From Haliotis cracherodii (lineage: Eukaryota): a stretch of 64,000 bases of DNA. The notes below the pieces were generated by a model, which saw nothing but the letters and a program-made list of their open reading frames with translations, did not search any database and had not been told where the DNA came from. Each line of letters starts with the position of its first letter. Within the stretch, counting starts at the first letter, position 1. The position numbers and the translations under genes were made by a program. Location of the stretch: positions 9,362,001 to 9,426,000 of the forward strand of contig NW_027266270.1 of the NCBI RefSeq assembly GCF_022045235.1, in the 5' to 3' direction. This document shows positions 24,799 through 61,795 of this stretch, in pieces.

Positions 24799-25558
24799 CT
24801 GAATAAAACAATAATGTTGATACCAAATATTGCCAAAATTAAACATGATATTGATCTTAAAACAACTCGTGGCGAATTCCTCTTTCAGAAAAGCAGATCG
24901 ATGCAATGTTGATCCATAACTACATTGACACTTTTCCTGTAAGTATGCTAATTTTATGAAGGACATAAGGGACGCAAGTGTGCATTAAGAAATTGGGTCC
25001 TCTCGGCCACACCTGTCAACGATGAAAATGAACGGAAATATATTTGATAATATTGAAATATTTTATTTTCTGGAAAAGTAGCAATTCAGATTAAATAACA
25101 GTTCCTGTAATATGAAAATACACGTTCTTGCAGGTATTGTATCTGTTTCATTGTTACAACATGAACGGTCACCTTGCAAGCAAGGTGAAAATGTTAAACT
25201 TAACCAGGTTCATATTTTCTGCCAATATTGTTTAATGAACATAGTAATGCATAACTTGTGTCGCAATGTTTACACACAAGCACACTGACACTGACAAGTA
25301 ACATTAGTACAATGCTATCGTCTTCACACAGAGAGTGTCTTGATGACTTTATCTTCGTCTTCGTCAACCCCAACCTTGTGACGCTCTAAACGTTATGGGA
25401 CTGAGCGACAGTGACTTATGTCTTCCTCTTGGCGTCGTCTTCGTCGTCTTGGACAACAGGCTTGCTGCTGTTGGTTCATCTTCTTGTTGGGAACTGTGAG
25501 TATAGTATGGATATTGATCCTACTGTTTGGAACCTTCTTGTAAGTTCGTTTGCGCTTT

Positions 25559-27054
25559 TCATCTGGTTACACCTGACAGCTGGAAAAGAGTACATTTGCA
25601 AAAATTAGAACCGCAGTAGAGAGTATTTTAATCATGTAATATTCGAAGGTTGTTTTTGGAGTCAAAATTTATCAATCACATTAAGAATCATTTGGGTCCT
25701 TGAAATGTTTCCCAAACGAAATCAATTAATTTTAGCATGCGTGTGGCCCAAGTGAGATCATGGCCAAGAGAACCTGAAGGAAAGTATGTTACATACCTGA
25801 CAGATGAGCTTCTGTGCTGGTCGTTTGTGTTGGTAGGTCCAGGCTAAATCCAGAAGGGCTGGACCATGTCCCTGATTTTGACATCTCTGGACAAACTGCG
25901 TACAGGCCGTTTGTAGGTCGGTGAATCCAAATTCCACAGATGCACAGAGTAATCCTGAAAGATCCGAGGACATATTGTAATGTGTTTGATCAAATATCAT
26001 CAAAAGGGTGAAGTTCATATTATGGATAATTGTCTGTGTTTCGCTCATGTGTCATCAAGATTAGTGGTATGGGGAAATGTTTGTTTTGAAATGAATATCC
26101 CATTTAAACAATTAAAGATAGTGCTTACCAACCACATTGTTAAAATCGAAGTTAGCTTTCCCTGAGTGGACGAATTTGAGGAACGCCCGAAAGTCTCCAA
26201 TCTGGTAGTCAGGAATGCTGATGGTGAGTTTCTGTGCAAAGGCTGAGTCTTTGATCTTTTTGCTCTTTGATCGTTCCAAGGAGGAGTGTTTCTGATGTTG
26301 AAGCAAAAGCTGATATAGGTACCTAGAGAAAAGAAAGAAACAAGTTAAAGACGACATGCATACACAACTAGTAAATGGTCCAAATATTGTTCTCATGTTG
26401 AGTACATTCACAGAGTATAAGAGCCAAACAGGCTCTACTTAAACATGCACTTATTATTGTCCTGACCTTTGTAATGGATTTGATTGTTTTCGAGAATATC
26501 TTACCTGCTTCGTGTAGCCATTATGGCTTTGACTCCATGAACAGGAGCCTTCTCCTTCCCAACGAGAAAGGTGACGTCACACATATCTGGCATGTTGAGG
26601 ATGAGGGAGAGGCTGTCCTGTAAGTCCCCTGTGCTTCTAAGCATCATGACGTCACCCCGACCGGAGGACTGTGAGGGGTGAGAGCGGCCTTGTGATGGGT
26701 TGGAACTGGATTGGCTGAACGATCTTGATTTTGAGGTCGTGCTCACGCCTTCATCAGAGGAGTAGTCGCTTGAGTCATAGCCTGACGAGGTACCTTCAGC
26801 TGGAATAAGAAAAGAAATCAGTTATGAAACAATATTCAGTTTGTTGCAAATGTTATTAAAGCTGAGTGGTGTTTGATGAACAGAACGGGTAGTTGAAATA
26901 TACTTTGAATAAAAACAACACCAATGAATTATTATCCTGATGTGATAAAAGTGAATAGTGCAAATGTCTCACCGTCTGCGTCATGACCACTGTGGTCAAT
27001 AGTTTCCATGGCCGAAGAGTCCAGAAGACAAAGTCGGGAATCGTAATGATTCAT
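25559..27054 (-). CDS. BTB/POZ protein, serine-enriched protein (gprs)-like, copy 1; 249 aa, 5 exons (27054-26973, 26799-26505, 26322-26129, 25954-25797, 25579-25559)
   Basis: All introns GT-AG with consistent phases (1,2,1,0); total 750 nt. BTB motifs LNMPDMCDVTFLVG..VHGVKAIMATRSRY, IPDY..FRAFLKFVHSG, LLCASVEFGFTDLQTAC. Upstream TATA box. Exon 5 (LSGVTR*) is the least certain. Confidence 0.85.
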
Positions 27055-27192
27055 GTTACTTGTTGTTAGATCTAATTAAGAATGAAAGACAGAACTGATA
27101 TTTGGCTAAATTCGACGAATCTAAAGAGCTAAGTATGTATCTCGATGTAATGTTTCCAAGAGTGGAATGCCTTCTTCCTGTAACAGAACAGC

Positions 27193-27345
27193 TTTATACC
27201 TTTGCGTATCACAACACAAACGACAGGGTCATTACTACAACTACATGTCACGATTAATTCAATGTTGACATGAAGGCTTTTGCTTAGCACACTTAGCTAG
27301 TGGCACGTGCTGCACTTGTGAATGAGATGACATCACGTGACCAAT
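27193..27345 (-). promoter_or_regulatory. Core promoter of the BTB gene (repeated in each unit)
   Basis: Minus-strand TATAAA at 27198-27193, ~140 bp above the ATG. CACGTG E-boxes at 27304-27309 and 27334-27339 (GGTCACGTGA context). CCAAT at 27341-27345. Confidence 0.6.
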
Positions 27346-28589
27346 CTAGCCGTAAGTGTTCTAGGGTAATGTCGTTAGTTGTCAAAACATCGACATAATA
27401 TAATTAGGATGATAATGTGTTTCAGGCGTTTGATTATTTAAGGATTTACGATATCCGTGTTCATTTGCCGGTGTTAATTGGTATCTTGTTATAAAGCATC
27501 CATTTGTACACAAGTTAGATTTGATATGAGTGGAACTTTTATATGCTCGTGATGTAGATGTAGTTACAGAATGTTGGTGGAATTATACACTATATATCTG
27601 TATAAATATGTGAAACTTACTTGCACTTGAAATATAGATGTTTAGGGTTATAGTTTCCACTGACTAAAGACAGTCATTGTGATTTCCTTATTGATGTATA
27701 ATTGAACTAAAATAGTTCTGTTATTGAACTGTGTATAAACATAACTGATAGTTTTTTGTTTCACTTTTCCTAAGTGCAAGTGTGACAACCAAAAGTTAGA
27801 GTGTCAAATGTTGAAAGGGAGTGTTTTTATTTCTGGTGTGTGTATATGACACCCTGCTGTTTCCTTACAATTTGTGTCAGCCAAAGTCAATTCACCGTGT
27901 CACTCTTCAGGCAAAGAGTTTGCTAAACTGAACTTTATTGTACTCGGGATTACTCGTGACACATGACCACATGATTTGAAACTGAGCGGAGGCGCAACGA
28001 TTTGTTGATTAGAGGGCTTGGCTATAGATGATATACTCAGCGATGTGTATTTGTTTAATCATAATGGAATGTGTGATTGTACGGTTGCTGACAGACGTTG
28101 TAGACAGGCTAGTCAAGTGGTACATGTTTGCATTTGAATTGACTGGCAATCAAGGCAGTTTGAGGAACAAACTTGCAACATATCACTAGAACCTATGCGC
28201 TCACTGCTTCTGCACTTATATCCCATGCTGTATAGCTTGTAATGGATTGGCATCAACATAAGATATAGGCTTGTTTGCCAATCCAGTTGGATTTCAAGAA
28301 ATAACTTTGTTTCAACTACTCTTAACTAAGCATTAACATCAAGCCTAATGAAGGCTTTAACTTTCCACAATTTCTAATTATGGTTACATGCACGCTCACA
28401 AAAAATCTTTTGTGTTGTATTGTCTCATTCGAACAGTTGAAACATTAGAGTTCATTGCAATTTACATGTGAGACATACATCACACCTAATTATATACAAA
28501 TGAGCTAATGAGTTCTTTTGATGAAGGAAGCTCTTTGCAGGTACAATTGGCACCAATATGTTCTTTATTTATAAGATAAAATATGCAGT

Positions 28590-28790
28590 ATGTCATGTAA
28601 ATGTGGGAGGAAAGCCGATAATGGTGCACAACTTTGGTGAAACCGATGTGCAGGGTTTATTGCTGGCAAAATGAGAATCATAATCAGAGCTGATCTAGAT
28701 TCAAACCAACAACCACAGGATTCTGGGCCGTCTAAAGGACGCAAGTGTGCATTAAGGAATGCGGCTCTCTAGGCCACACTTGTTAACGAT
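28590..28790 (-). mobile_element. Old SINE family B relic inside the repeat-unit spacer (present in every unit)
   Basis: ATGTGGGAGGAAAGCC, CTTTGGTGAAACC, GATTCAAACC and GGACGCAAGTGTGCA follow the same order as the SINE B at 9660-9850. Confidence 0.65.
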
Positions 28791-29431
28791 GAAACTGAAC
28801 GGAAACATATTTTGTATTGTTGAAATATTTTATTTTCTGGACAAATCGCAATTCAGATAAAACCGCAGTTCCTGTAATGCTCAGTGTAATCTATTATATG
28901 ATAATACACGTTCTTGCAGGTATTGTATCTGTTTCATTGTTACAACATGAACGGTCACCTTGCAAGCAAGGTGAAAATGTTAAACTTAACCAGGTTCATA
29001 TTTTCTGCCAATATTGTTTAATGAACATAGTAATGTATAACTTGTGTCGCAATGTTTACACACAAGCACACTGACACTGACAAGTAAGATTAGTACAATG
29101 ACACTGTTAAGTACGTGTCGGTATGCTTTGTTCCTTCACATAAACAACAACGTACAATGTGCAAGTCAAGCATCATGTCTGACAATGCTATCGTCTTCAC
29201 ACAGAGAGTGTCTTGATGACTTTATCTTCGTCTTCGTCAACCCCAACCTTGTGACGCTCTAAACGTTATGGGACTGAGCGACAGTGACTTATGTCTTCTT
29301 CTTGGCGTCGTCTTCGTCGTCTTGGACAACAGGCTTGCTGCTGTTGGTTCATCCTCTTGTTGGGAACTGTGAGTATAGTATGGATATTGATCCTACTGTT
29401 TGGAACCTTCTTGTAAGTTCGTTTGCGCTTT

Positions 29432-30927
29432 TCATCTGGTTACACCTGACAGCTGGAAAAGAGTACATTTGCAAAAATTAGAACCGCAGTAGAGAGTATT
29501 TTAATCATGTAATATTCGAAGGTTGTTTTTGGAGTCAAAATTTATCAATCACATTAAGAATCATTTGGGTCCTTGAAATGTTTCCCAAACGAAATCAATT
29601 AATTTTAGCATGCGTGTGGCCCAAGTGAGATCATGGCCAAGAGAACCTGAAGGAAAGTATGTTACATACCTGACAGATGAGCTTCTGTGCTGGTCGTTTG
29701 TGTTGGTAGGTCCAGGCTAAATCCAGAAGGGCTGGACCATGTCCCTGATTTTGACATCTCTGGACAAACTGCGTACAGGCCGTTTGTAGGTCGGTGAATC
29801 CAAATTCCACAGATGCACAGAGTAATCCTGAAAGATCCGAGGACATATTGTAATGTGTTTGATCAAATATCATCAAAAGGGTGAAGTTCATATTATGGAT
29901 AATTGTCTGTGTTTCGCTCATGTGTCATCAAGATTAGTGGTATGGGGAAATTTTTGTGTTGAAATGAATATCCCATTTAAACAATTAAAGATAGTACTTA
30001 CCAACCACATTGTTAAAATCGATGTTAGCTTTCCCTGAGTGGACGAATTTGAGGAACGCCCGAAAGTCTCCAATCTGGTAGTCAGGAATGCTGATGGTGA
30101 GTTTCTGTGCAAAGGCTGAGTCTTTGATCTTTTTGCTCTTTGATCGTTCCAAGGAGGAGTGTTTCTGATGTTGAAGCAAAAGCTGATATAGGTACCTAGA
30201 GAAAAGAAAGAAACAAGTTAAAGACGACATGCATACACAACTAGTAAATGGTCCAAATATTGTTCTCATGTTGAGTACATTCACAGAGTATAAGAGCCAA
30301 ACAGGCTCTACTTAAACATGCACTTATTATTGTCCTGACCTTTGTAATGGATTTGATTGTTTTCGAGAATATCTTACCTGCTTCGTGTAGCCATTATGGC
30401 TTTGACTCCATGAACAGGAGCCTTCTCCTTCCCAACGAGAAAGGTGACGTCACACATCTCTGGCATGTTGAGGATGAGGGAGAGGCTGTCCTGTAAGTCC
30501 CCTGTGCTTCTAAGCATCATGACGTCACCCCGACCGGAGGACTGTGAGGGGTGAGAGCGGCCTTGTGATGGGTTGGAACTGGATTGGCTGAACGATCTTG
30601 ATTTTGAGGTCGTGCTCACGCCTTCATCAGAGGAGTAGTCGCTTGAGTCATAGCCTGACGAGGTACCTTCAGCTGGAATAAGAAAAGAAATCAGTTATGA
30701 AACAATATTCAGTTTGTTGCAAATGTTATTAAAGCTGAGTGGTGTTTGATGAACAGAACGGGTAGTTGAAATATACTTTGAATAAAAACAACACCAATGA
30801 ATTATTATCCTGATGTGATAAAAGTGAATAGTGCAAATGTCTCACCGTCTGCGTCATGACCACTGTGGTCAATAGTTTCCATGGCCGAAGAGTCCAGAAG
30901 ACAAAGTCGGGAATCGTAATGATTCAT
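29432..30927 (-). CDS. BTB/POZ gprs-like protein, copy 2 (249 aa; PEMCD variant)
   Basis: Same 5-exon structure and splice sites as copy 1; no disruption seen. Confidence 0.85.
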
Positions 30928-33324
30928 GTTACTTGTTGTTAGATCTAATTAAGAATGAAAGACAGAACTGATATTTGGCTAAATTCGACGAATCTAAAGA
31001 GCTAAGTATGTACCTCGATGTAATGTTTCCAAGAGTGGAATGCCTTCTTCCTGTAACAGAACAGCTTTATACCTTTGCGTATCACAACACAAACGACAGG
31101 GTCATTACTACAACTACATGTCACGATTAATTCAATGTTGACATGAAGGCTTCAGCTTAGCACATTTAGCTAGTGGCACGTGCTGCACTTGTGAATGAGA
31201 TGACATCACGTGACCAATCTAGCCGTAAGTGTGCTACGGTAATGTCGTTTGTTGTCAAAACATCGACACAATATAATTAGGATGATAATGTGTTTCAGGT
31301 GTTTGATTATTTAAGGATTTACGATATCTGTGTTCATTTGCCGGTGTTAATTGGTATCTTGTTATAAAGCATCCATTTGTACACAAGTTAGATTTGATAT
31401 GAGTGGAACTTTTATATGCCCGTGATGTAGATGTAGTTACAGAATGTTGGTGGAATTATACACTATATATCTGTATAAATATGTGAAACTTACTTGCACT
31501 TGAAATATAGATGTTTAGGGTTATAGTTTCCACTGACTGAAGACAGTCATTATGATTTCCTTATTGATGTATAATTGAACTAAAATAGTTCTGTTATTGA
31601 ACTGTGTATAAACATAACTGATAGTTTTTTGTTTCACTTTTCCTAAGTGCAAGTGTGACAACACAAAGTTAGAGTGTCAAATGTTGAAAGAGAGTGTTTT
31701 TATTTCTGGTGTGTGTATATGACACCCTGCTGTTTCCTTACAATTTGTGTCAGTCAAAGTCAATTCACCGTGTCACTCTTCAGGCAAAGAGTTTGCTAAA
31801 CTGAACTTTATTGTACTCGGGATTACTCGTGACACATGACCACATGATTTGAAACTGAGCGGAGGCGCAACGATTTGTTGATTAGAGGGCTTGGCTATAG
31901 ATGATATACTCAGCGATGTGTATTTGTTTAATCATAATGGAATGTGTGATTGTACGGTTGCTGATAGACGTTGTAGACAGGCTAGTCAAGTGGTACATGT
32001 TTGCATTTGAATTGACTGGCAATCAAGGCAGTTTGAGGAACAAACTTGCAACATATCACTAGAACCTTTGCGCTCACTGCTTCTGCACTTATATCCCATG
32101 CTGTATAGCTTTTAATGGATTGGCATCAACATAAGACATGGGCTTGTTTGCCAATCCAGTTGGATTTCAAGAAATAACTTTGTTTCAACTACTCTTAACT
32201 AAGCATTAACATCAAGCCTAATGAAGGCTTTAACTTTCCACAATTTCTAATTATGGTTACATGCACGCTCACAAAAAAATCTTTTGTGTTGTATTGTCTC
32301 ATTCGAACAGTTGAAACATTAAAGTTCATTGCAATTTACATGTGAGACATACATCACACCTAATTATATACAAATGAGCTAATGACATTAACATGCGTGT
32401 TCAAGTTCTTTTGATGAAGGAAGCTCTTTGCAGGTACAATTGGCACCAATATGTTCTTTATTTATAAGATAAAATATGCAGTATGTCATGTAAATGTGGG
32501 AGGAAAGCCGATAATGGTGCACAACTTTGGTGAAACCGATGTGCAGGGTTTATTGCTGGCAAACTGAGAATCATAATCAGAGCTGATCTAGATTCAAACC
32601 AACAACCACAGGATTCTGGGCCGTCTAAAGGACGCAAGTGTGCATTAAGAAATGCGGCGCTCTAGGCCACACTTGTTAACGATGAAACTGAACGGAAACA
32701 TATTTTGTATTGTTGAAATATTTTATTTTCTGGACAAATCGCAATTCAGATAAAATCGCAGTTCCTGTAATGCTCAGTGTAATCTATTATATGATAATAC
32801 ACGTTCTTGCAGGTATTGTATATGTTTCATTGTTACAACATGAACGGTCACCTTGCAAGCAAGGTGAAAATGTTAAACTTAACCAGGTTCATATTTTCTG
32901 CCAATATTGTTTAATGAACATAGTAATGTATAACTTGTGTCGCAATGTTTACACACAAGCACACTGACACTGACGAGTAACATTAGTACAATGACACTGT
33001 TAAGTACGTGTCGGTATGCTTTGTTCCTTCACATAAACAACAACGTACAATGTGCAAGTCAAGCATCATGTCTGACAATGCTATCGTCTTCACACAGAGA
33101 GTGTCTTGATGACTTTATCTTCGTCTTCGTCAACCCCAACCTTGTGACGCTCTAAACGTTATGGGACTGAGCGACAGTGACTTATGTCTTCTTTTTGGCG
33201 TCGTCTTCGTCGTCTTGGACAACAGGCTTGCTGCTGTTGGTTCATCCTCTTGTTGGGAACTGTGAGTATAGTATGGATATTGATCCTACTGTTTGGAACC
33301 TTCTAGTGAGTTCGGTTGCGCTTT

Positions 33325-34820
33325 TCATCTGGTTACACCTGACAGCTGGAAAAGAGTACATTTGCAAAAATTAGAACCGCAGTAGAGAGTATTTTAATCA
33401 TGTAATATTCGAAGGTTGTTTTTGGAGTCAAAATTTATCAATCACATTAAGAATCATTTGGGTCCTTGAAATGTTTCCCAAACGAAATCAATTAATTTTA
33501 GCATGCGTGTGGCCCAAGTGAGATCATGGCCAAGAGAACCTGAAGGAAAGTATGTTACATACCTGACAGATGAGCTTCTGTGCTGGTCGTTTGTGTTGGT
33601 AGGTCCAGGCTAAATCCAGAAGGGCTGGACCATGTCCCTGATTTTGACATCTCTGGACAAACTGCGTACAGGCCGTTTGTAGGTCGGTGAATCCAAATTC
33701 CACAGATGCACAGAGTAATCCTGAAAGATCCGAGGACATATTGTAATGTGTTTGATCAAATATCATCAAAAGGGTGAAGTTCATATTATGGATAATTGTC
33801 TGTGTTTCGCTCATGTGTCATCAAGATTAGTGGTATGGGGAAATTTTTGTGTTGAAATGAATATGCCATTTAAACAATTAAAGATAGTACTTACCAACCA
33901 CATTGTTAAAATCGATGTTAGCTTTCCCTGAGTGGACGAATTTGAGGAACGCCCGAAAGTCTCCAATCTGGTAGTCAGGAATGCTGATGGTGAGTTTCTG
34001 TGCAAAGGCTGAGTCTTTGATCTTTTTGCTCTTTGATCGTTCCAAGGAGGAGTGTTTCTGATGTTGAAGCAAAAGCTGATATAGGTACCTAGAGAAAAGA
34101 AAGAAACAAGTTAAAGACGACATGCATACACAACTAGTAAATGGTCCAAATATTGTTCTCATGTTGAGTAAATTCACAGAGTATAAGAGCCAAACAGGCT
34201 CTACTTAAACATGCACTTATTATTGTCCTGACCTTTGTAATGGATTTGATTGTTTTCGAGAATATCTTACCTGCTTCGTGTAGCCATTATGGCTTTGACT
34301 CCATGAACAGGAGCCTTCTCCTTCCCAACGAGAAAGGTGACGTCACACATATCTGGCATGTTGAGGATGAGGGAGAGGCTGTCCTGTAAGTCCCCTGTGC
34401 TTCTAAGCATCATGACGTCTCCCCGACCGGAGGACTGTGTAGGGTGAGTGCGGCCTTGTGATGGGTTGGAACTGGATTGGCTGAACGATCTTGATTTTGA
34501 GGTCGCGCTCACGCCTTCATCAGAGGAGTAGTCGCTTGAGTCATAGCCTGACGAGGTACCTTCAGCTGGAATAAGAAAAGAAATCAGTTATGAAACAATA
34601 TTCAGTTTGTTGCAAATGTTATTAATGCTGAGTGGTGTTTGATGAACAGAACGGGTAGTTGAAATATACTTTGAATAAAAACAACACCAATGAATTATTA
34701 TCCTGATGTGATAAAAGTGAATAGTGCAAATGACTCACCGTCTGCGTCATGACCACTGTGGTCAATAGTTTCCATGGCCGAAGAGTCCAGAAGACAAAGT
34801 CGGGAATCGTAATGATTCAT
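33325..34820 (-). CDS. BTB/POZ gprs-like protein, copy 3 (249 aa)
   Basis: Same structure; SATSK and GRTHPTQ variant. Confidence 0.85.
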
Positions 34821-48903: not shown

Positions 48904-50393
48904 TTACACCTGACAGCTGGAAAAGAGTACATTTGCAAAAATTAGAACCGCAGTAGAGAGTATTTTAATCATGTAATATTCGAAGGTTGTTTTTGGAGTC
49001 AAAATTTATCAATCACATTAAGAATCATTTGGGTCCTTGAAATGTTTCCCAAACGAAATCAATTAATTTTAGCATGCGTGTGGCCCAAGTGAGATCATGG
49101 CCAAGAGAACCTGAAGGAAAGTATGTTACATACCTGACAGATGAGCTTCTGTGCTGGTCGTTTGTGTTGGTAGGTCCAGGCTTGATGTCCAGAAGGGCTG
49201 GACCATGTCCCTGATTTTGACATCTCTGGACAAACTGCGTACAGGCCGTTTGTAGGTCGGTGAATCCAAATTCCACAGATGCACAGAGTAATCCTGAAAG
49301 ATCCGAGGACATATTGTAATGTGTTTGATCAAATATCATCAAAAGGGTGAAGTTCATATTATGGATAATTGTCTGTGTTTCGCTCATGTGTCATCAAGAT
49401 TAGTGGTATGGGGAAATTTTTGTGTTGAAATGAATATCCCATTTAAACAATTAAAGATAGTACTTACCAACCACATTGTTAAAATCGATGTTAGCTTTCC
49501 CTGAGTGGACGAATTTGAGGAACGCCCGAAAGTCTCCAATCTGGTAGTCAGGAATGCTGATGGTGAGTTTCTGTGCAAAGGCTGAGTCTTTGATCTTTTT
49601 GCTCTTTGATCGTTCCAAGGAGGAGTGTTTCTGATGTTGAAGCAAAAGCTGATATAGGTACCTAGAGAAAAGAAAGAAACAAGTTAAAGACGACATGCAT
49701 ACACAACTAGTAAATGGTCCAAATATTGTTCTCATGTTGAGTACATTCACAGAGTATAAGAGCCAAACAGGCTCTACTTAAACATGCACTTATTATTGTC
49801 CTGACCTTTGTAATGGATTTGATTGTTTTCGAGAATATCTTACCTGCTTCGTGTAGCCATTATGGCTTTGACTCCATGAACAGGAGCCTTCTCCTTCCCA
49901 ACGAGAAAGGTGACGTCACACATATCTGGCATGTTGAGGATGAGGGAGAGGCTGTCCTGTAAGTCCCCTGTGCTTCTAAGCATCATGACGTCTCCCCGAC
50001 CGGAGGACTGTGAGGGGTGAGTGCGGCCTTGTGATGGGTTGGAACTGGATTGGCTGAACGATCTTGATTTTGAGGTCGCGCTCACGCCTTCATCAGAGGA
50101 GTAGTCGCTTGAGTCATAGCCTGACGAGGTACCTTCAGCTGGAATAAGAAAAGAAATCAGTTATGAAACAATATTCAGTTTGTTGCAAATGTTATTAAAG
50201 CTGAGTGGTGTTTGATGAACAGAACGGGTAGTTGAAATATACTTTGAATAAAAACAACACCAATGAATTATTATCCTGATGTGATAAAAGTGAATAGTGC
50301 AAATGACTCACCGTCTGCGTCATGACCACTGTGGTCAATAGTTTCCATGGCCGAAGAGTCCAGAAGACAAAGTCGGGAATCGTAATGATTCAT
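48904..50393 (-). CDS. BTB/POZ gprs-like protein, copy 7; same +2 indel (247 aa), possibly a pseudogene
   Basis: Identical indel at 49182-49187. Confidence 0.65.
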
Positions 50394-52789: not shown

Positions 52790-54285
52790 TCATCTGGTTA
52801 CACCTGACAGCTGGAAAAGAGTACATTTGCAAAAATTAGAACCGCAGTAGAGAGTATTTTAATCATGTAATATTCGAAGGTTGTTTTTGGAGTCAAAATT
52901 TATCAATCACATTAAGAATCATTTGGGTCCTTGAAATGTTTCCCAATCGAAATCAATTAATTTTAGCATGCGTGTGGCCCAAGTGAGATCATGGCCAAGA
53001 GAACCTGAAGGAAAGTATGTTACATACCTGACAGATGAGCTTCTGTGCTGGTCGTTTGTGTTGGTAGGTCCAGGCTAAATCCAGAAGGGCTGGACCATGT
53101 CCCTGATTTTGACATCTCTGGACAAACTGCGTACAGGCCGTTTGTAGGTCGGTGAATCCAAATTCCACAGATGCACAGAGTAATCCTGAAAGATCCGAGG
53201 ACATATTGTAATGTGTTTGATCAAATATCATCAAAAGGGTGAAGTTCATATTATGGATAATTGTCTGTGTTTCGCTCATGTGTCATCAAGATTAGTGGTA
53301 TGGGGAAATTTTTGTGTTGAAATGAATATCCCATTTAAACAATTAAAGATAGTACTTACCAACCACATTGTTAAAATCGATGTTAGCTTTCCCTGAGTGG
53401 ACGAATTTGAGGAACGCCCGAAAGTCTCCAATCTGGTAGTCAGGAATGCTGATGGTGAGTTTCTGTGCAAAGGCTGAGTCTTTGATCTTTTTGCTCTTTG
53501 ATCGTTCCAAGGAGGAGTGTTTCTGATGTTGAAGCAAAAGCTGATATAGGTACCTAGAGAAAAGAAAGAAACAAGTTAAAGACGACATGCATACACAACT
53601 AGTAAATGGTCCAAATATTGTTCTCATGTTGAGTACATTCACAGAGTATTAGAGCCAAACAGGCTCTACTTAAACATGCACTTATTATTGTCCTGACCTT
53701 TGTAATGGATTTGATTGTTTTCGAGAATATCTTACCTGCTTCGTGTAGCCATTATGGCTTTGACTCCATGAACAGGAGCCTTCTCCTTCCCAACGAGAAA
53801 GGTGACGTCACACATATCTGGCATGTTGAGGATGAGGGAGAGGCTGTCCTGTAAGTCCCCTGTGCTTCTAAGCATCATGACGTCTCCCCGACCGGAGGAC
53901 TGTGAGGGGTGAGTGCGGCCTTGTGATGGGTTGGAACTGGATTGGCTGAACGATCTTGATTTTGAGGTCGCGCTCACGCCTTCATCAGAGGAGTAGTCGC
54001 TTGAGTCATAGCCTGACGAGGTACCTTCAGCTGGAATAAGAAAAGAAATCAGTTATGAAACAATATTCAGTTTGTTGCAAATGTTATTAAAGCTGAGTGG
54101 TGTTTGATGAACAGAACGGGTAGTTGAAATATACTTTGAATAAAAACAACACCAATGAATTATTATCCTGATGTGATAAAAGTGAATAGTGCAAATGACT
54201 CACCGTCTGCGTCATGACCACTGTGGTCAATAGTTTCCATGGCCGAAGAGTCCAGAAGACAAAGTCGGGAATCGTAATGATTCAT
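52790..54285 (-). CDS. BTB/POZ gprs-like protein, copy 8 (249 aa)
   Basis: Same structure, reference frame. Confidence 0.85.
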
Positions 54286-56682
54286 GTTACTTGTTGTTAG
54301 ATCTAATTAAGAATGAAAGACAGAACTGATATTTGGCTAAATTCGACGAATCTAAAGAGCTAAGTATGTACCTCGATGTAATGTTTCCAAGAGTGGAATG
54401 CCTTCTTCCTGTAACAGAACAGCTTTATACCTTTGCGTATCACAACACAAACGACAGGGTCATTACTACAACTACATGTCACGATTAATTCAATGTTGAC
54501 ATTAAGGCTTTTGCTTAGCACATTTAGCTAGTGGCACGTGCTGCACTTGTGAATGAGATGACATCACGTGACCAATCTAGCCGTAAGTGTGCTACGGTAA
54601 TGTCGTTTGTTGTCAAAACATCGACACAATATAATTAGGATGATAATGTGTTTCAGGTGTTTGATTATTTAAGGATTTACGATATCCGTGTTCATTTGCC
54701 GGTGTTAATTGGTATCTTGTTATAAAGCATCCATTTGTACACAAGTTAGATTTGATATGAGTGGAACTTTTATATGCTCGTGATGTAGATGTAGTTACAG
54801 AATGTTGGTGGAATTATACACTATATATCTGTATAAATATGTGAAACTTACTTGCACTTGAAATATAGATGTTTAGGGTTATAGTTTCCACTGACTAAAG
54901 ACAGTCATTGTGATTTCCTTATTGATGTATAATTGAACTAAAATAGTTCTGTTATTGAACTGTGTATAAACATAACTGATAGTTTTTTGTTTCACTTTTC
55001 CTAAGTGCAAGTGTGACAACACAAAGTTAGAGTGTCAAATGTTGAAAGAGAGTGTTTTTATTTCTGGTGTGTGTATATGACACCCTGCTGTTTCCTTACA
55101 ATTTGTGTCAGCCAAAGTCAATTCACCGTGTCACTCTTCAGGCAAAGAGTTTGCTAAACTGAACTTTATTGTACTCGGGATTACTCGTGACACATGACCA
55201 CATGATTTGAAACTGAGCGGAGGCGCAACGATTTGTTGATTAGAGGGCTTGGCTATAGATGATATACTCAGCGATGTGTATTTGTTTAATCATAATGGAA
55301 TGTGTGATTGTACGGTTGCTGACAGACGTTGTAGACAGGCTAGTCAAGTGGTACATGTTTGCATTTGAATTGACTGGCAATAAAGGCAGTTTGAGGAACA
55401 AACTTGCAACATATAACTAGAACCTATGCGCTCACTGCTTCTGCACTTATATCCCATGCTGTATAGCTTGTAATGGATTGGCATCAACATAAGACATGGG
55501 CTTGTTTGCCAATCCAGTTGGATTTCAAGAAATAACTTTGTTTCAACTACTCTTAACTAAGCATTAACATCAAGCCTAATGAAGGCTTTAACTTTCCACA
55601 ATTTCTAATTATGGTTACATGCACGCTCACAAAAAAATCTTTTGTGTTGTATTGTCTCATTCGAACAGTTGAAACATTAAAGTTCATTGCAATTTACATG
55701 TGAGACATACATCACACCTAATTATATACAAATGAGCTAATGACATTAACATGCGTGTTCAAGTTCTTTTGATGAAGGAAGCTCTTTGCAGGTACAATTG
55801 GCACCAATATGTTCTTTATTTATAAGATAAAATATGCAGTATGTCATGTAAATGTGAGAGGAAAGCCGATAATGGTGCACAACTTTGGTGAAACCGATGT
55901 GCAGGGTTTATTGCTGGCAAACTGAGAATCATAATCAGAGCTGATCTAGATTCAAACCAACAACCACAGGATTCTGGGCCGTCGAAGGTACGCAAGTGTG
56001 CATTAAGAAATGCGGCGCTCTAGGCCACACTTGTTAACGATGAAACTGAACGGAAACATATTTTGTATTGTTGAAATATTTTATTTTCTGGACAAATCGC
56101 AATTCAGATAAAATCGCAGTTCCTGTAATGCTCAGTGTAATCTATTATATGATAATACACGTTCTTGCAGGTATTGTATCTGTTTCATTGTTACAACATG
56201 AGCGGTCACCTTGCAAGCAAGGTGAAAATGTTAAACTTAACCAGGTTCATATATTCTGCCAATATTGTTTAATGAACATAGTAATGCATAACTTGTGTCG
56301 CAATGTTTACACACAAGCACACTGACACTGACGAGTAACATTAGTACAATGACACTGTTAAGTACGTGTCGGTATGCTTTGTTCCTTCACATAAACAACA
56401 ACGTACAATGTGCAAGTCAAGCATCATGTCTGACAATGCTATCGTCTTCACACAGAGAGTGTCTTGATGACTTTATCTTCGTCTTCGTCAACCCCAACCT
56501 TGTGACGCTCTAAACGTTATGGGACTGAGCGACAGTGACTTGTGTCTTCTTCTTGGCGTCGTCTTCGTCGTCTTGGACAACAGGCTTGCTGCTGTTGGTT
56601 CATCCTCTTGTTGGGAACTGTGAGTATAGTATGGATATTGATCCTACTGTTTGGAACCTTCTTGTAAGTTCGTTTGCGCTTT

Positions 56683-58178
56683 TCATCTGGTTACACCTGA
56701 CAGCTGGAAAAGAGTACATTTGCAAAAATTAGAACCGCAGTAGAGAGTATTTTAATCATGTAATATTCGAAGGTTGTTTTTGGAGTCAAAATTTATCAAT
56801 CACATTAAGAATCATTTGGGTCCTTGAAATGTTTCCCAAACGAAATCAATTAATTTTAGCATGCGTGTGGCCCAAGTGAGATCATGGCCAAGAGAACCTG
56901 AAGGAAAGTATGTTACATACCTGACAGATGAGCTTCTGTGCTGGCCGTTTGTGTTGGTAGGTCCAGGCTAAATCCAGAAGGGCTGGACCATGTCCCTGAT
57001 TTTGACATCTCTGGACAAACTGCGTACAGGCCGTTTGTAGGTCGGTGAATCCAAATTCCACAGATGCACAGAGTAATCCTGAAAGATCCGAGGACATATT
57101 GTAATGTGTTTGATCAAATATCATCAAAAGGGTGAAGTTCATATTATGGATAATTGTCTGTGTTTCGCTCATGTGTCATCAAGATTAGTGGTATGGGGAA
57201 ATTTTTGTGTTGAAATGAATATCCCATTTAAACAATTAAAGATAGTACTTACCAACCACATTGTTAAAATCGATGTTAGCTTTCCCTGAGTGGACGAATT
57301 TGAGGAACGCCCGAAAGTCTCCAATCTGGTAGTCAGGAATGCTGATGGTGAGTTTCTGTGCAAAGGCTGAGTCTTTGATCTTTTTGCTCTTTGATCGTTC
57401 CAAGGAGGAGTGTTTCTGATGTTGAAGCAAAAGCTGATATAGGTACCTAGAGAAAAGAAAGAAACAAGTTAAAGACGACATGCATACACAACTAGTAAAT
57501 GGTCCAAATATTGTTCTCATGTTGAGTACATTCACAGAGTATAAGAGCCAAACAGGCTCTACTTAAACATGCACTTATTATTGTCCTGACCTTTGTAATG
57601 GATTTGATTGTTTTCGAGAATATCTTACCTGCTTCGTGTAGCCATTATGGCTTTGACTCCATGAACAGGAGCCTTCTCCTTCCCAACGAGAAAGGTGACG
57701 TCACACATATCTGGCATGTTGAGGATGAGGGAGAGGCTGTCCTGTAAGTCCCCTGTGCTTCTAAGCATCATGACGTCTCCCCGACCGGAGGACTGTGTGG
57801 GGTGAGTGCGGCCTTGTGATGGGTTGGAACTGGATTGGCTGAACGATCTTGATTTTGAGGTCGCGCTCACGCCTTCATCAGAGGAGTAGTCGCTTGAGTC
57901 ATAGCCTGAAGAGGTACCTTCAGCTGGAATAAGAAAAGAAATCAGTTATGAAACAATATTCAGTTTGTTGCAAATGTTATTAAAGCTGAGTGGTGTTTGA
58001 TGAACAGAACGGGTAGTTGAAATATACTTTGAATAAAAACAACACCAATGAATTATTATCCTGATGTGATAAAAGTGAATAGTGCAAATGACTCACCGTC
58101 TGCGTCATGACCACTGTGGTCAATAGTTTCCATGGCCGAAGAGTCCAGAAGACAAAGTCGGGAATCGTAATGATTCAT
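56683..58178 (-). CDS. BTB/POZ gprs-like protein, copy 9 (249 aa)
   Basis: Same structure, reference frame. Confidence 0.85.
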
Positions 58179-59499
58179 GTTACTTGTTGTTAGATCTAAT
58201 TAAGAATGAAAGACAGAACTGATATTTGGCTAAATTCGACGAATCTAAAGAGCTAAGTATGTACCTCGATGTAATGTTTCCAAGAGTGGAATGCCTTCTT
58301 CCTGTAACAGAACAGCTTTATACCTTTGCGTATCACAACACAAACGACAGGGTCATTACTACAACTACATGTCACGATTAATTCAATGTTGACATGAAGG
58401 CTTTTGCTTAGCACATTTAGCTAGTGGCACGTGCTGCACTTGTGAATGAGATGACATCACGTGACCAATCTAAGAATAAGTGTGCTACGGTAATGTCGTC
58501 TGTTGTCAAAACACCGAGGTAATAGAGTTTGGGTGATGATGTGTTTCGGGTGTTTGATTATTTAAGGATTTACGATATACGTGTTCATTTGTCGGTGATA
58601 AATGGTATTATGTTATTAAGGATCCATTTGGAGTCAAGTTATGTTTAATGCGAGTGGAACTTTTAGATGCTGATGATGTAAATGTAGTAACGATATGTTG
58701 ATGGAATTATACATTATCTACCTGTATACGTACGTGAATTATTTGCACTTGAAATATAGATGCTAGGGTTACAGTTTCCACTCACTGAAAACAGCCATTG
58801 TGATTTCCTTATTGAAATAAAATTAAACTAAAATAGTTCTGTTATTGAACAGTGTATAAATATATAACTGATCTTTTTTGTTTCAATTTTTTCAAGTGCA
58901 AGTGTGATATGACAACAAAGTTAGAGTGTCAAATGATTTTTTATTGTTCGTGTGTGCAAATGACACCCTGCTATTTCAATAAAATTTGTGTCAGCCAAAG
59001 TCATTTCATCGTGTCATTCGTCAAACAAACAGTTTGCTGAACTGAACTTTATTGTACTCCGGATTACTCGTGACACATAACCACATCATTTGGGATTGAG
59101 CGGAGGCGCAGCGATTTGTTGAGTTGAGGGCTTGGCTATAGATGATATGCACAATGAGGAGTATTGTTTAATCATTAATTGAATGTGTGATTGTACGATT
59201 GCTGATAGATGTTGTAGACAAGCTAGTCAAGTGGTACATGTTTTTTTTAAAAATTGATTGGCAATCAAGGCGCTTTGATGAACAATCTTCCAACGTGTCA
59301 CATATAACTAGAACCTTTGAAAACACAAAGACCACGTGCACATTATCAGGAAATGGCACATGAGACTTGTAGTGATGACATTATTGATACACATGGTCCG
59401 CTCTGACTTCCGAAAAGCCAGAGACAGTTGCCAGTGACATGAAATGGTTCTGAGACAATAATGTCAATACATGTTTCCTTTGTTATTTCCAGCATTTGC

Positions 59500-59700
59500 T
59501 ATAATAGATTCTGCCACGCAATGCATTCGCGACTACGATTAGCTTGTAGTGATCTCAGCTTACACAAAGCTCATAGAATGATTTCAAATAAGTCATCCTG
59601 CTCTTGTGGCGCTACTTGCGAAACTACAACTCATTATTTATTTGGATGTCAATATTAGTACACACATAGAAATAATATGTTTGTTATCCAATACGATACG
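59500..59700 (+). mobile_element. Non-LTR retrotransposon 3' fragment (CR1/L2-group-like C-terminal zinc-finger region)
   Basis: HSRLRLACSDL...CSCGATCETTTHYLFGCQY matches the CxC..E..HY..C motif at LINE ORF2 ends. Confidence 0.6.
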
Positions 59701-61117
59701 ATCTTGTGACCGTAAGATCCTAAGTGGAATATGGAAATGTTGCAAAAATCGGTAAGTAAAAGGGTAGATTTCATTCAGTTTGTGCATCGTTACATCTGTC
59801 ACATTAAATGAAGCAATTAGGGTTCATTGTTCAAACACATACTAGTATCTTATAAGCAAAACCTTCCATTGTTGAGTCGTGTTATTGAATTAACATCTGA
59901 ATGCCAGGCTATATGTGCTTCCTATGAAATCACAGCTCATACACTGATGTCCCGTGAAGAATAGCTTGTAATGGATTGGCATCAACATAAGACTTGGGCT
60001 TGTTTTCCAATCCATTTTGATTTCAAGCAATAATTTTGTTTCAACCATTCTCAAATAATCATTTACGTAAAGCCTAAGAAAAGCTTCAACTTTCCACACT
60101 TTCTAATTATGGTTACATGCACTCTCAGAAAAAAAACCTCTTTAGTGTTGTATTGTCTCAGACGTACGTTTGAAATATCAAAGATCATTAAAATTTACAT
60201 GTGCAACATACGTTACACCTAATTATATACAAATGAGCTAATGACATTAACATGCGTGTTCAAGTTCTTTTTACCAAGAAAGCTCTTTGCAGATACAGTT
60301 GACAACAATGTGTCCTTTATTAATGAGATAAAATATGCAGTATTTCAGCTAAATATGGAAGGAAAGCCGCAAATGGCGTACAACTTCTAAATCTAGATTC
60401 AAACCAACAAACACTGGATTCAGGACGCAACTGTGCATACAGAAATGCGGTGGTCGAGGCCACACATGTCAACAATGAAAATGAACGGATATGTATTTGG
60501 TATTTTTGTAACATTTTATTTTCTAAAAAAAATCGTAAATCTGATTAAATCGCAGTTCCTGTAATGCTCAGTTGAAATAATATATGATAATACATGTTCT
60601 TGAATGTATTGTATCTGTTCATTGTTACAACATAAACTGTCACCATGCAAGCAATGTGGAAATGTAAAACTTAAACAGGTTCATATTTTCTGCCAATACT
60701 GTTTAATGAACATAGTAATACATAACATGTGTCGCTATTTTTATACATTCACACTGACACTGGCAAGGAACATAAGTACGATGACACTGTTAAGTACTTG
60801 TCGGTATGCTTTGTTCCTTCACATTAACAACAACGTACAATGTGCAAGTCAAGAATCATGTTTGACAATGCTAGTGTCTTCACACACAGAGTGTCTTGGT
60901 GACTTTATCTTCGTCTTCGTCAACCACAGCTTTGTGACGCTCTAAACGTTATGGGACTGAGCGACAGTGACTGGTGTCTTCTTCTTCATTTCGTCGTCTT
61001 CGTCATCTTGAACAACAGGCTTGCTGCTGTTGGTTCATCCTCTCGTTGGGAACAGAGAATGTAGTATGGATATTGATCCTACTGTTGGGAACCTTCATGT
61101 AAGCTCGGTTGCGGTTT

Positions 61118-61795
61118 TCATCTGGTTACACACGACAGCTGGAAAAGAGTAAAGTATCCAAAATTAGAACAGCAATAAAGACTATTTGATCATCTAATAT
61201 TCGAGAAGTTCTTTGCAGTCTATATTTATCAATCCCTTAAAAATCATTCGGTTCCTTGAAATGTTCCTCAACCAAATCAATTACATATACGTTTATCATG
61301 CGTGTGGCCCAAGTGTGGTCAATGCCAAGAGCATCTCAAGCTACATACCTGGCAGATGAGTTTCTGTGCTGGTCGTTTATGTTGGTAGGTCCAGGCTAAA
61401 TCCAGAAGGGCTAGACCATGTCCCTGACTTTGACATCTCTGGATAAACTGCATACAGGCCGTTCGTAGGTCGGAGAATCCAAATTCCACAGATGCACAGA
61501 GTAATCCTGAAAGAACCGAGGACATATTGTAATGTGTTTGATAAAATATTATCATGAGTAGTCAGGAATGGTGATGGTGAGTTTCTGTGAAAAGGGTGAG
61601 TCTTTGATCTTTTTGGTCTTGGGTCGCTCAACGGAGGACTGTTTCTGATGTTGAAGCAAAAGCTGATACATGTACCTAGAGAAAAGAAAGAAAAAATTGA
61701 AGACGATATTTAAACACAAACAGTCCAAAAAATGTTCCCATGTTGAGTACATTCACAGGGTATAAGAGCCAAATGTACTCTACTTAAACATTTAC
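61118..61795 (-). pseudogene. Diverged BTB gene copy 10: exon 5 (61138-61118), exon 4 (61506-61349) and partial exon 3 (from 61675)
   Basis: A ~200-bp deletion at ~61556 removes the 3' part of exon 3 and its donor site. Intron 2 is interrupted by a retrotransposon. Exon 5 reads LSCVTR*. Confidence 0.85.

What the first reader, a model, noticed from the sequence alone, without database searches (positions are those of the whole stretch)
24967..61795. Recent nine-fold tandem amplification of a complete BTB/POZ gene with its promoter
Nine head-to-tail ~3.89-kb units, about 99% identical by eye, each contain a TATA/E-box promoter, five exons with intact splice sites and a candidate polyA signal (AATAAA, e.g. 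~28830 on the minus strand). Diverged relatives bracket the array on both sides. Three age layers (ancient pseudogene, diverged copy 10, fresh array) sit at one locus, which is birth-and-death evolution in progress. BTB proteins commonly dimerise and act as Cullin-3 adaptors. Such amplification suggests dosage selection or a conflict, immune or germline role (inference; function unknown).
Basis: partly seen in the sequence, partly recalled or inferred. Interest (0 to 1): 0.8.

Follow-up and report, generated by a model that had tools for sequence, protein, structure and literature searches.

The report
Abalone tandem array of BTB genes
Nine almost identical copies of a small BTB-domain gene sit head to tail in the black abalone genome, and they are only the first third of a 25-copy double array of a gene family that keeps amplifying in molluscs and whose function is unknown.

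Summary
Window 24967-58450 carries nine head-to-tail minus-strand copies of a five-exon BTB gene. The period is 3,893 bp and the eight full units are 98.9-99.97% identical. All nine copies keep their splice sites, a TATA box and two E-boxes. Copies 6 and 7 share a +2 frameshift in exon 4.

The "three age layers" reading does not hold. "Copy 10" is the first unit of a second, younger and larger array just beyond the window (about 15 units of 4,392 bp, 99.6-100% identical), cut by a retrotransposon. I found no old pseudogene to the left.

The genome is Haliotis cracherodii. RefSeq already annotates these copies as "serine-enriched protein-like". Red abalone has at least eight accessions of the same type, separated by species-fixed substitutions. 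This fits either separate amplifications or concerted evolution.

RNA-like contigs of a related organism confirm three of the four predicted introns. The protein has a disordered acidic Ser-rich head, then a BTB fold and two 3-box-like helices. It has no BACK or target-binding domain. A cullin-3 role is inferred, not shown.

Read depth could not confirm copy number. The scan noted similar BTB-only arrays elsewhere in this genome (s1-829634, s1-823190).

Verdict: real, ordinary in kind, moderately interesting.

The parts
24967..25314 (-). Left edge of the array: the 3' end region of copy 1. It is 88% identical to the same part of the inner units and lacks 81 nt that they have.
   Evidence: An X16 RNA-like contig carries the 81 nt (record 2).
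25309..58450 (-). Young A-type array: 8.5 periods of 3,893 bp carrying nine gene copies.
   Evidence: the switch from A to B type is at about 58450.
25062..27198 (-). Gene copy 1, TATA box to AATAAA. Exons: 27054-26973, 26799-26505, 26322-26129, 25954-25797, 25579 onward. It corresponds to RefSeq protein P0181, identified by its I-to-F variant.
   Evidence: Introns 2-4 are confirmed by X16 joints.
28829..31071 (-). Gene copy 2, the reference model. Exons: 30927-30846, 30672-30378, 30195-30002, 29827-29670, and 29452 onward with a stop after LSGVTR. It corresponds to RefSeq protein P0179, identified by its D-to-E variant.
32722..34964 (-). Gene copy 3.
36614..38856 (-). Gene copy 4. Its unit is 99.97% identical to that of copy 3.
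40506..42748 (-). Gene copy 5.
44399..46643 (-). Gene copy 6, with a +2 insertion in exon 4 (45399-45240). The last conserved helix is replaced, and a stop follows 3 full codons into exon 5.
48293..50537 (-). Gene copy 7, with the same +2 insertion in exon 4 (49293-49134).
52187..54429 (-). Gene copy 8.
56080..58322 (-). Gene copy 9, the last A-type copy. The A/B switch lies about 270 bp upstream of its ATG.
58450..61803 (-). First, partial unit of the neighbouring B-type array, 97-100% identical to B units. It holds exon 5, exon 4 (61504-61349) and a truncated exon 3 (61674-61558). A deletion of about 200 bp lies at 61557/61558.
61804..64000 (.). It runs past the window end to about C7:9430456 and splits the first B gene between exon 2 and exon 3.
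   Evidence: the B unit breaks at unit position about 251 and resumes at about 242.
32484..32660 (.). Dispersed short repeat inside every unit, in the intergenic part, with many copies on other contigs at 70-78% identity. The left edge of the array (unit position 2626) falls inside it.

Best explanation
Structure (shown). Window 24967-58450 is a genuine tandem gene array in the black abalone, Haliotis cracherodii. It holds nine same-strand copies of a 2.2-kb, five-exon gene, each with its own promoter, at a 3,893-bp period. It directly abuts a second array of a 13%-diverged sister gene (about 15 units of 4,392 bp). Together they make a 109-kb block of 25 copies: 9 A, 14 intact B and 2 broken B. 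Four older paralogues follow it.

Origin (inferred). The arrays grow and stay uniform by unequal crossing-over and gene conversion between units. The marks of this are:
- edge units are the most diverged;
- neighbouring units share private variants, including a frameshift;
- two variant types are interleaved along the array;
- all copies within a species share residues that differ between species.

Product. Each intact copy encodes a protein of about 249 aa. It has a disordered acidic Ser-rich head with a conserved SSGYDSSD motif, a BTB domain with a Lys-rich insert, and two 3-box-like helices. It has no BACK domain and no target-binding domain (shown by Pfam and a confident model).

Function (inferred, not shown). 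It most likely dimerises through the BTB domain and docks on cullin-3. There it would act either as a minimal adaptor that uses its head to bind targets, or as a competitor of the long BTB-BACK members of the same family. High copy number would serve dosage.
For: Array:
- Constant period and 98.9-99.97% unit identity.
- Nine full exon sets with intact splice sites.
- 96 variable alignment columns among the 8 full units. These form structured groups, {U1,U2,U5} against {U3,U4,U6,U7,U8}, which an assembler would not invent.
- No N inside the array.
- The assembly is 37x PacBio HiFi with hifiasm and a read N50 of 16 kb (PMC9709981, passages).

Second array and switch point.

Independent annotation:
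- RefSeq proteins XP_071100593-601 (A type) and XP_071100602-611 (B type) sit on a contig of 36,859,700 bases, the length of this contig.
- The variants private to copies 1 and 2 are found in P0181 and P0179.
- Red abalone has at least 8 accessions in the same 90% cluster on one scaffold.

Promoter:
- TATA box and E-boxes are present in 9 of 9 copies.
- The two E-boxes, a TGTCAACATTGA block and the TATA box are kept at the same spacing in B, D2 and D3, while the sequence around them has diverged.
- X16 depth falls to 0 upstream of about 27225 and downstream of about 25092.

Splicing: X16 joints at 25579|25797, 25954|26129 and 26322|26505 have GT..AG ends on the minus strand and depth 160-240. 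They match introns 4, 3 and 2 exactly.

Constraint:
- A against B: pN/pS 0.38 (20 non-synonymous and 15 synonymous changes).
- Within A: 5 non-synonymous and 4 synonymous variable codons.

Protein:
- Pfam BTB at 54.9 bits.
- AlphaFold model with pLDDT above 90 over the BTB part (about residues 90-240, dipping to about 75 in the 141-160 loop), plus helices 221-231 and 235-245.
- Best Foldseek matches are SPOP BTB/3-box, KEAP1 and KLHL11 BTB-BACK.
- Long relatives carry BTB plus BACK and hit KLHL11, gigaxonin and SPOP by sequence.
Against: - Copy number is not confirmed by reads. In the one raw DNA run (X21, about 1.6x of the genome read) the array bins average about 0.8, against about 15 expected for nine copies. 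The unique flank averages only about 0.13, and 5,251 of 5,253 laid reads fit only in part. The run is therefore uninformative, but it does not help.
- Heterozygosity of the sequenced animal (1.56%) exceeds unit divergence, so some haplotype mixing in the array path cannot be excluded.
- The RNA evidence comes from another organism label (D), whose contigs differ by 2-4% from copy 1. It comes from runs whose RNA status is the tool's guess. Three RNA-like runs under the window's own species label hold almost none of the unit's words.
- Intron 1 is not among the 15 joints shown; 33 more were not shown.
- 2 of 9 copies are frameshifted, and that frameshift was itself duplicated.
- RefSeq models end in three different ways, two of them by splicing into the next unit, so the 3' end and the independence of the units are not settled.
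- Cullin-3 binding is untested, and the loop that usually contacts cullin-3 carries a family-specific Lys-rich insert.
Confidence: 0.75

Rival explanations
1. The array is old and shared with other abalones. Its 99% uniformity would then come from continuing concerted evolution (unequal exchange and conversion), not from a recent nine-fold burst in the black abalone lineage.
For: - Red abalone has at least 8 accessions of the same A type on one scaffold.
- All 7 distinct black-abalone A proteins differ from all 4 distinct red-abalone A proteins at the same 5 of 145 residues. Of these, 3 are derived in black abalone and 2 in red.
- The A/B split predates the species split, because red-abalone A sides with black-abalone A wherever B differs from both.
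- Edge units are more diverged than inner ones.
- DNA contigs of two other organism labels hold about 0.46-0.48 of the unit's words.
Against: The same pattern arises if one A gene amplified separately in each species. U3/U4 differ at about 1 site in 3.9 kb, and copies 6 and 7 share a fresh frameshift, so very recent unit duplications did happen.
Confidence: 0.4
2. The copy number is an assembly artefact: a shorter array inflated by mis-joining of the two haplotypes or by repeat mis-resolution.
For: Heterozygosity of 1.56% is higher than unit divergence. The two interleaved variant types could in principle be alleles. X21 depth shows no nine-fold excess in absolute terms.
Against: - The region is a contiguous HiFi contig without N.
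- Reads with N50 16 kb span about 4 units, and diagnostic differences occur about every 100 bp.
- A second array (B), a third on contig 8 (4,889-bp period, 6 units at 99.3-100%) and a red-abalone array in an independent assembly show the same habit.
- In X21 the array bins are still about 6-fold above the unique flank, though on only about 13 against 2 reads.
Confidence: 0.07
3. The copies are decaying or functionless: a satellite-like gene array that is carried along, perhaps transcribed, but no longer makes a useful protein.
For: - 2 of 9 copies are frameshifted, and the broken unit was duplicated.
- The first and last B copies are broken.
- Exons 3 and 4 evolve almost neutrally between A and B (pN/pS 0.57-0.85).
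- Runs under the window's own species label gave no RNA support.
Against: - 7 of 9 A copies and 14 of 16 B copies keep open frames and all splice sites.
- Exon 2 is under strong constraint: 1 non-synonymous against 8 synonymous changes.
- Promoter blocks are conserved in paralogues whose proteins are only 50-65% identical.
- Spliced contigs reach depth 160-240 in one run.
- Short forms of 226-264 aa with the same head motif and the same end point exist in limpet, clam and oyster.
Confidence: 0.12

Closest known systems
'Serine-enriched protein-like' / GPRS-like BTB proteins of molluscs (NCBI and UniProt names; named after Drosophila gprs, a link I only recall)
   Same: The window's genes are these proteins: RefSeq XP_071100593-601. 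The family shares an N-terminal SSGY(D/E)SS motif, a BTB domain with a Lys-rich insert, and an end shortly after two post-BTB helices in Haliotis, Lottia, Mya, Mercenaria and Saccostrea. The Mya arenaria members have consecutive accessions, some identical, on one contig, which suggests tandem copies there too (inference).
   Different: Long members (341-503 aa, for example from the chiton Liolophura sinensis) carry a BACK domain and a further conserved C-terminal region that the window's genes lack. I found no paper on the family: 'serine-enriched protein' occurs in 1 paper of the library, an unrelated yeast study, and in none together with 'abalone'.
SPOP-type BTB/3-box cullin-3 adaptors (also KLHL11, KEAP1, gigaxonin)
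   Same: The predicted fold is a BTB domain followed by two helices where the 3-box sits. Best structural matches are SPOP BTB/3-box (3htm, 3hqi), KEAP1 BTB and KLHL11 BTB-BACK. Long relatives match KLHL11, gigaxonin and SPOP by sequence.
   Different: There is no MATH, Kelch or other target-binding domain. Sequence identity is only 13-23%. A family-specific basic insert sits between helix 126-145 and strand 158-162. Cullin-3 binding was not tested.
Lineage-specific tandem expansions of BTB adaptor genes: MATH-BTB in grasses and nematodes, TDPOZ in rodents (the nematode and rodent cases are recalled)
   Same: These are clusters of many young BTB genes made by tandem duplication in one lineage. 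Stogios et al. 2005 (PMC1257465) and the grass MATH-BTB paper (PMC4091423) were seen as search listings and abstract starts only.
   Different: Those families keep a target-binding MATH domain that diversifies. Here the copies are nearly identical and have no such domain, which points to dosage or homogenisation more than to diversification.

Membership tests
BTB/POZ domain (Pfam PF00651) | Profile match above Pfam's gathering score | tested here: met
   The RefSeq protein of an A copy (P0174) scores 54.9 bits against a cut-off of 20.5, E 1.2e-14, residues 99-214. Single exons alone fall below the cut-off (14.6 and 16.9 bits) but hit the profile in the right order.
BTB/POZ domain (Pfam PF00651) | BTB fold | tested here: met
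   AlphaFold model with pLDDT above 90 over the BTB part (about residues 90-240, dipping to about 75 in the 141-160 loop). Of the Foldseek PDB matches, 203 have E <= 0.001, led by BTB domains. This is a model, not a solved structure.
Mollusc GPRS-like ('serine-enriched protein-like') short BTB family | Shared head motif, Lys-rich insert in the BTB domain, and an end after two post-BTB helices | tested here: met
   Alignment of 28 proteins. A profile of exon 2 finds 331 proteins at E <= 0.001. Names come from NCBI and UniProt.
Mollusc GPRS-like ('serine-enriched protein-like') short BTB family | Orthology to Drosophila gprs | not tested
   No Drosophila sequence was fetched. The name is an automatic annotation.
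Cullin-3 substrate adaptor (BTB plus 3-box) | Two-helix 3-box directly after the BTB domain | tested here: met
   Helices 221-231 and 235-245 in the model align with the first BACK helices of the long relatives. The match to SPOP BTB/3-box is rank 2. Copies 6 and 7 lose the second helix.
Cullin-3 substrate adaptor (BTB plus 3-box) | Cullin-3 contact residues and binding | not testable with these tools
   This needs a binding assay or a complex model. The contact loop carries a family-specific insert.
Cullin-3 substrate adaptor (BTB plus 3-box) | A separate target-binding domain (MATH, Kelch, PHR and the like) | tested here: not met
   Pfam finds only BTB in P0174, P0185, P0005 and P0007. The frame stops 6 codons into exon 5. 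I therefore do not file it as a classical adaptor.
BTB-BACK proteins (KLHL/BTBD type) | BACK domain (PF07707) | tested here: not met
   BACK is absent in 4 of 4 short forms and present in 4 of 4 long relatives.
Tandem gene array maintained by unequal exchange | Same orientation, constant period, more diverged edges, and private variants shared by neighbours | tested here: met
Tandem gene array maintained by unequal exchange | Copy number confirmed by reads, and variable between individuals | tested here: inconclusive
   X21 raw reads were too thin and fitted poorly. The other DNA runs are contigs only.

The most novel reading that the evidence does not exclude
The short GPRS-like genes (BTB plus 3-box only) may be a mollusc-wide family under recurrent runaway tandem amplification with concerted evolution. 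Black abalone alone has at least four young arrays: 9 x 3.9 kb, 15 x 4.4 kb, 6-11 x 4.9 kb and 5 x 9.6 kb. Red abalone and the clam Mya arenaria appear to hold further ones. The proteins would act as dose-dependent cullin-3 sponges, or as poison subunits of the long family members. This would be a copy-number-tuned brake on a ubiquitin ligase, driven by a conflict (virus, germline or embryo) and not by target diversification.
Probability: 0.12. Interest if true: 0.65.

Novelty: new member of a known kind. Interest (0 to 1): 0.4.

Why it matters
The black abalone is critically endangered and its genome is used for population and immune-gene studies. A 109-kb block of 25 near-identical genes will collapse or mis-map in short-read work. 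It already yields chimeric gene models that splice one unit into the next, and it may vary in copy number between animals.

Biologically, it is a clean example of two sister arrays kept uniform side by side, in a family of BTB proteins without a target-binding domain whose function nobody has studied. If the copies are cullin-3 binders, copy number would set the dose of a ligase competitor, which is testable. As a kind of feature (a young tandem gene cluster, a lineage-specific BTB expansion) it is well known.

Tried and rejected
- Per-exon searches of solved structures gave nothing useful: exon 2 had 0 hits, and exons 3 and 4 only chance-level hits with E >= 0.067.
Whole-protein steps used RefSeq proteins that the tools returned.
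- An ancient pseudogene to the left of the array was looked for and not found.
- IRF-type promoter motifs were a lead from another BTB-only array of this genome. GAAANNGAAA occurs 3 times in the window, none inside the array, and no more often than in shuffles.
- TCACGTGA occurs once per unit (9 matches against 1.2 expected). The nine are copies of one site, so only its conservation in B and D2 counts; D3 has a one-base variant.
- Copy number by read depth was inconclusive.
- Genomic context in other abalones could not be fetched.
- The ancient-DNA paper on black abalone immune adaptation (PMC13229213) has no occurrence of BTB, serine-enriched, copy number, tandem or ubiquitin in its main text.
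- TRF does not report the array because its longest period is 500.

Full report
**What is there**

A 4,000-base probe from the array (window 30001-34000) hits the window full-length eight times at 98.6-100%, spaced 3,892-3,895 bases apart (3,873 for the first). Partial, more diverged hits lie at both ends. The eight full units are 98.90-99.97% identical pairwise, and units 3 and 4 are 99.97% identical. TRF does not list the array because its longest period is 500. The only N runs in the window, 17995-18185 and 18903-19075, lie outside the array. I left them alone.

**The gene**

The gene lies on the minus strand and I read it as five exons. In copy 2 they are:
- exon 1: 30927-30846
- exon 2: 30672-30378
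- exon 3: 30195-30002
- exon 4: 29827-29670
- exon 5: from 29452, with a stop after six codons (LSGVTR)

Each exon, taken with 15-nt flanks, occurs nine times at 97.9-100%. All nine copies keep AG acceptors, GT donors and open frames. The exception is copies 6 and 7, which share a +2 insertion plus two substitutions in exon 4. That change replaces the last 17 residues of the exon, and the frame then stops after three full codons of exon 5.

Exons were searched and translated one by one. Whole-protein steps used RefSeq proteins that the tools returned.

**Promoter and ends**

All nine copies have TATAAA at -144 from the ATG, CACGTG at -285 and -255, and AATAAA 618 nt after the start of exon 5 (512 nt in copy 1).

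Nine copies of one site are not nine observations. The better evidence comes from the paralogues. Both E-boxes, a TGTCAACATTGA block and the TATA box are kept at the same spacing in the B-type gene and in paralogues D2 and D3. The proteins of D2 and D3 are only about 50-65% identical to A, and their surrounding DNA no longer aligns well.

**Reads**

One call of the look-up of sequencing runs found 20 of its 24 listed runs holding the unit or part of it, from 9 studies:
- DNA contigs of organism A hold 0.59-0.80 of the words.
- Organisms B and C hold 0.46-0.48.
- Organism D, whose runs the tool guesses to be RNA, holds 0.05-0.13.
- Three RNA-like runs with organism A's label hold about 0.00.

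I laid four runs on window 21600-27399, which covers the left flank plus copy 1, at 90% likeness. In X16 three joints have CT..AC ends on the plus strand, that is GT..AG on the gene strand, at depth 160-240:
- 25579|25797, which is intron 4;
- 25953|26128 (cut +1), which is intron 3;
- 26319|26502 (cut +3), which is intron 2.

They match the predicted exon borders of copy 1 exactly. Intron 1 is not among the 15 joints shown; 33 more were not shown.

X16 depth is 68-406 across the gene bins. It is 0 in bin 24898-25091 and 0 in bin 27226-27399, which fits a transcript running from just below the TATA box to the AATAAA. The contigs differ from copy 1 by 2-4%, so they come from a related organism's gene and not from this animal.

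X17 and X20 give thin contigs (depth 2-9). Some still hold intron sequence. One (X17 record 13) has an odd internal skip that I cannot explain.

**Read depth**

The raw DNA run X21 was read to 1,938 million letters, about 1.6x of the genome.
- The twelve array bins (25092-27399) average about 0.83.
- Ten unique flank bins (22182-22569 and 23540-25091) average about 0.13.
- 5,251 of 5,253 laid reads fit only in part.

That corresponds to about 13 reads against 2. The ratio leans towards many copies, but both values are far below the single-copy expectation.

Other bins are dominated by repeats. One is a MITE-like inverted pair at about 21807-21997 and 23236-23473. The other is an expressed repeat at 22669-23177.

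**Beyond the window**

The window is C7:9362001-9426000 of a 1.18-Gb genome. A search of the whole genome with exon 2 gives 51 matches:
- the 9 A copies;
- 15 copies at a 4,392-bp spacing from C7:9430515 to 9492286;
- 1 partial copy at 9495783;
- 4 older paralogues at 9.505-9.527 Mb;
- 4 on contig 67;
- 11 on contig 8;
- 2 on contig 11;
- 5 at C7:13.23-13.27 Mb.

I fetched C7:9426001-9536000. The B array runs from 9430457 to 9495789. It has 13 full and 2 near-full units at 99.56-100% identity to the probe unit. A and B units are 85-87% identical over most of their length, and B has about 600 extra bases.

Fourteen B genes have exons 1-4 intact. The last copy is rearranged.

A three-way sliding comparison shows a sharp switch at window position about 58450. 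To the left the sequence is 99-100% A type. To the right it is 97-100% B type.

Its exons 1-2 lie at C7:9430515-9431037, beyond a retrotransposon that starts at window 61804. A deletion of about 200 bp has removed the end of its exon 3.

On the left, only 24967-25314 is related, at 88% to A units and 80% to B units. tblastn with nine family proteins finds no BTB remnant in window 1-25000 or in the preceding 10 kb (best E 0.45).

**History**

Among the eight full A units, 96 alignment columns vary, 19 of them from one deletion in unit 1. The commonest shared patterns group {U2,U5}, {U1,U2,U5} and {U3,U4}, so two variant types are interleaved along the array. Together with the diverged edges and the duplicated frameshift, this is what unequal exchange between units produces. 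It is also not what an assembler would invent.

Between A and B I count 15 synonymous and 20 non-synonymous differences (pS 0.098, pN 0.037, ratio 0.38). Constraint is strong in exon 2 (8 synonymous against 1 non-synonymous, plus a 7-codon gap) and weak in exons 3 and 4 (ratio 0.57-0.85). Within A there are 4 synonymous and 5 non-synonymous variable codons.

**Identity of the genome and prior annotation**

A profile of exon 2 from six paralogues found 331 proteins at E <= 0.001 in the representative library. The cluster look-ups name them "serine-enriched protein-like" or "GPRS-like". They come from Haliotis cracherodii, H. rufescens, H. rubra, H. asinina, Lottia, Mya, Mercenaria, Saccostrea and Liolophura.

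The H. cracherodii proteins sit on a contig of 36,859,700 bases, exactly the length of contig 7. P0181 carries the I-to-F change private to copy 1, and P0179 the D-to-E change private to copy 2. The window is therefore black abalone, and its nine copies are already RefSeq genes (XP_071100593-601). The B copies are XP_071100602 onward.

The genome paper describes 37x PacBio HiFi reads with N50 16 kb, hifiasm, 1.18 Gb and 1.56% heterozygosity. I read these as passages of PMC9709981; the word "tandem" does not occur in its main text.

The RefSeq models end in three ways:
- Two splice exon 4 into the next unit downstream. One tail is the next copy's exon 2 read out of frame. The other matches that copy's leader by eye (my translation was one base off frame).
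- The third uses a distal acceptor.

The X16 contigs support the proximal acceptor, as do the ...LSSVTR-type ends of paralogues and of H. asinina.

**Comparison with red abalone**

The same 90% cluster holds at least eight H. rufescens accessions on one 61-Mb scaffold. Over 145 residues, all 7 distinct black-abalone A proteins differ from all 4 distinct red-abalone A proteins at the same 5 positions. At 3 of these B agrees with red abalone, and at 2 with black. Wherever B differs from both, the two A sets agree.

So A and B were already separate genes before the species split. Each species' A copies have since been made uniform, either by separate amplifications or by concerted evolution.

**The protein**

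- Pfam finds BTB in the RefSeq A protein P0174 (54.9 bits, residues 99-214) and nothing else. Four long relatives have BTB plus BACK.
- The AlphaFold model was built on an alignment of 28 proteins and has mean pLDDT 78. Residues 1-80 are disordered. A confident BTB fold covers 84-217, followed by two further helices at 221-231 and 235-245.
- The best Foldseek matches in the PDB are SPOP BTB/3-box, KEAP1 BTB and KLHL11 BTB-BACK.
- By sequence, P0174 has one marginal PDB hit. A long relative matches KLHL11, gigaxonin, SPOP, KBTBD4 and KEAP1.
- The short forms of several molluscs share the head motif SSGY(D/E)SS and stop at the same place.

The product is therefore a BTB plus 3-box protein without a target-binding domain. 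That it binds cullin-3 is an inference from the fold.

**Other arrays and earlier notes**

The contig-8 array has a 4,889-bp period with six units at 99.3-100% and older units around them. The C7:13.2-Mb array has units of about 9.6 kb at about 95-99%.

The scan holds notes on an "8-copy tandem amplification of a short BTB-only gene" and on a 115-kb BTB-only array with IRF-type promoter motifs, both on other pieces of this genome. I do not know whether either is one of the arrays I saw. The IRF-type core GAAANNGAAA is absent from the present array.

**Literature**

"Serine-enriched protein" together with "abalone" gives 0 papers. "Serine-enriched protein" alone gives 1 paper, an unrelated yeast study. 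A six-term search requiring any two of the terms listed only general mollusc papers, with no occurrence of the phrase among those listed. BTB family expansions in other lineages are well described; I saw these as search listings only.

**Verdict**

The feature is real and was read correctly as a young tandem gene array. In kind it is ordinary: a lineage-specific tandem gene cluster that RefSeq has already annotated. The double array, the repeated amplification of this family and its unknown function give it moderate interest.

Noticed in passing
L001-L007 (C7:9430457-9495789), just beyond the window: A second tandem array of a sister BTB gene: 13 full and 2 near-full units of 4,392-4,394 bp at 99.56-100% identity. 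14 genes have exons 1-4 intact. The first is split by a retrotransposon and the last is rearranged.
   Followed up: yes
L008-L011 (C7:9504426-9527747): Four older paralogues (D1-D3 on the minus strand, D4 on the plus strand), 50-69% identical to A per exon. D2 and D3 keep the promoter blocks.
   Followed up: partly
L013-L018 (C8:14038416-14090793): Another array of the same family: 4,889-bp period, six units at 99.3-100%, flanked by units at 84-97%.
   Followed up: partly
L019-L023 (C7:13229380-13271984): An older array of the family with units of about 9.6 kb at roughly 95-99% identity and several internal rearrangements.
   Followed up: partly
window 21807-21997 and 23236-23473: An inverted pair of short repeats (MITE-like, 72% identical to each other). 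It has very high depth in the DNA run (about 500-580 where single copy is about 1.6) and summed contig depths of tens of thousands in all three RNA-like runs. Many loose ends lie at its borders.
   Followed up: no
window 22669-23177: A stretch matched at about 93% identity by one contig in each of the three RNA-like runs (depth 9-153). X21 reads carry some of the same variant letters. It looks like an expressed repeat or gene fragment with other copies elsewhere.
   Followed up: no
window 20360-21645: A dispersed element with at least 40 copies at 83-93% identity on many contigs.
   Followed up: no
window 15043-16715; 2635-2993; 19600-20147: A 34-bp minisatellite (about 50 copies, strong G over C skew), a 19-bp minisatellite (19 copies) and an (ACT)n run of 183 copies.
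   Followed up: no
RefSeq proteins P0174, P0176, P0179, P0175 against window 30613-30672 and about 31050: RefSeq gene models of the A copies splice exon 4 into the next unit's exon 2 (read out of frame) or into its leader. This is either real read-through between units or an annotation artefact of near-identical copies.
   Followed up: partly
Mya arenaria proteins WAQ94851-WAQ94859 (cluster of P0007): Consecutive accessions on one 63-Mb contig, several with identical 264-aa sequences. A clam appears to have its own tandem cluster of the short GPRS-like genes.
   Followed up: no
window 26009-26610 (X17 record 13): A thin contig that keeps intron 3 but skips from 26241 to 26494, losing the 5' part of exon 3 and most of intron 2. 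It could be a deleted copy in the other organism or a graph artefact.
   Followed up: no
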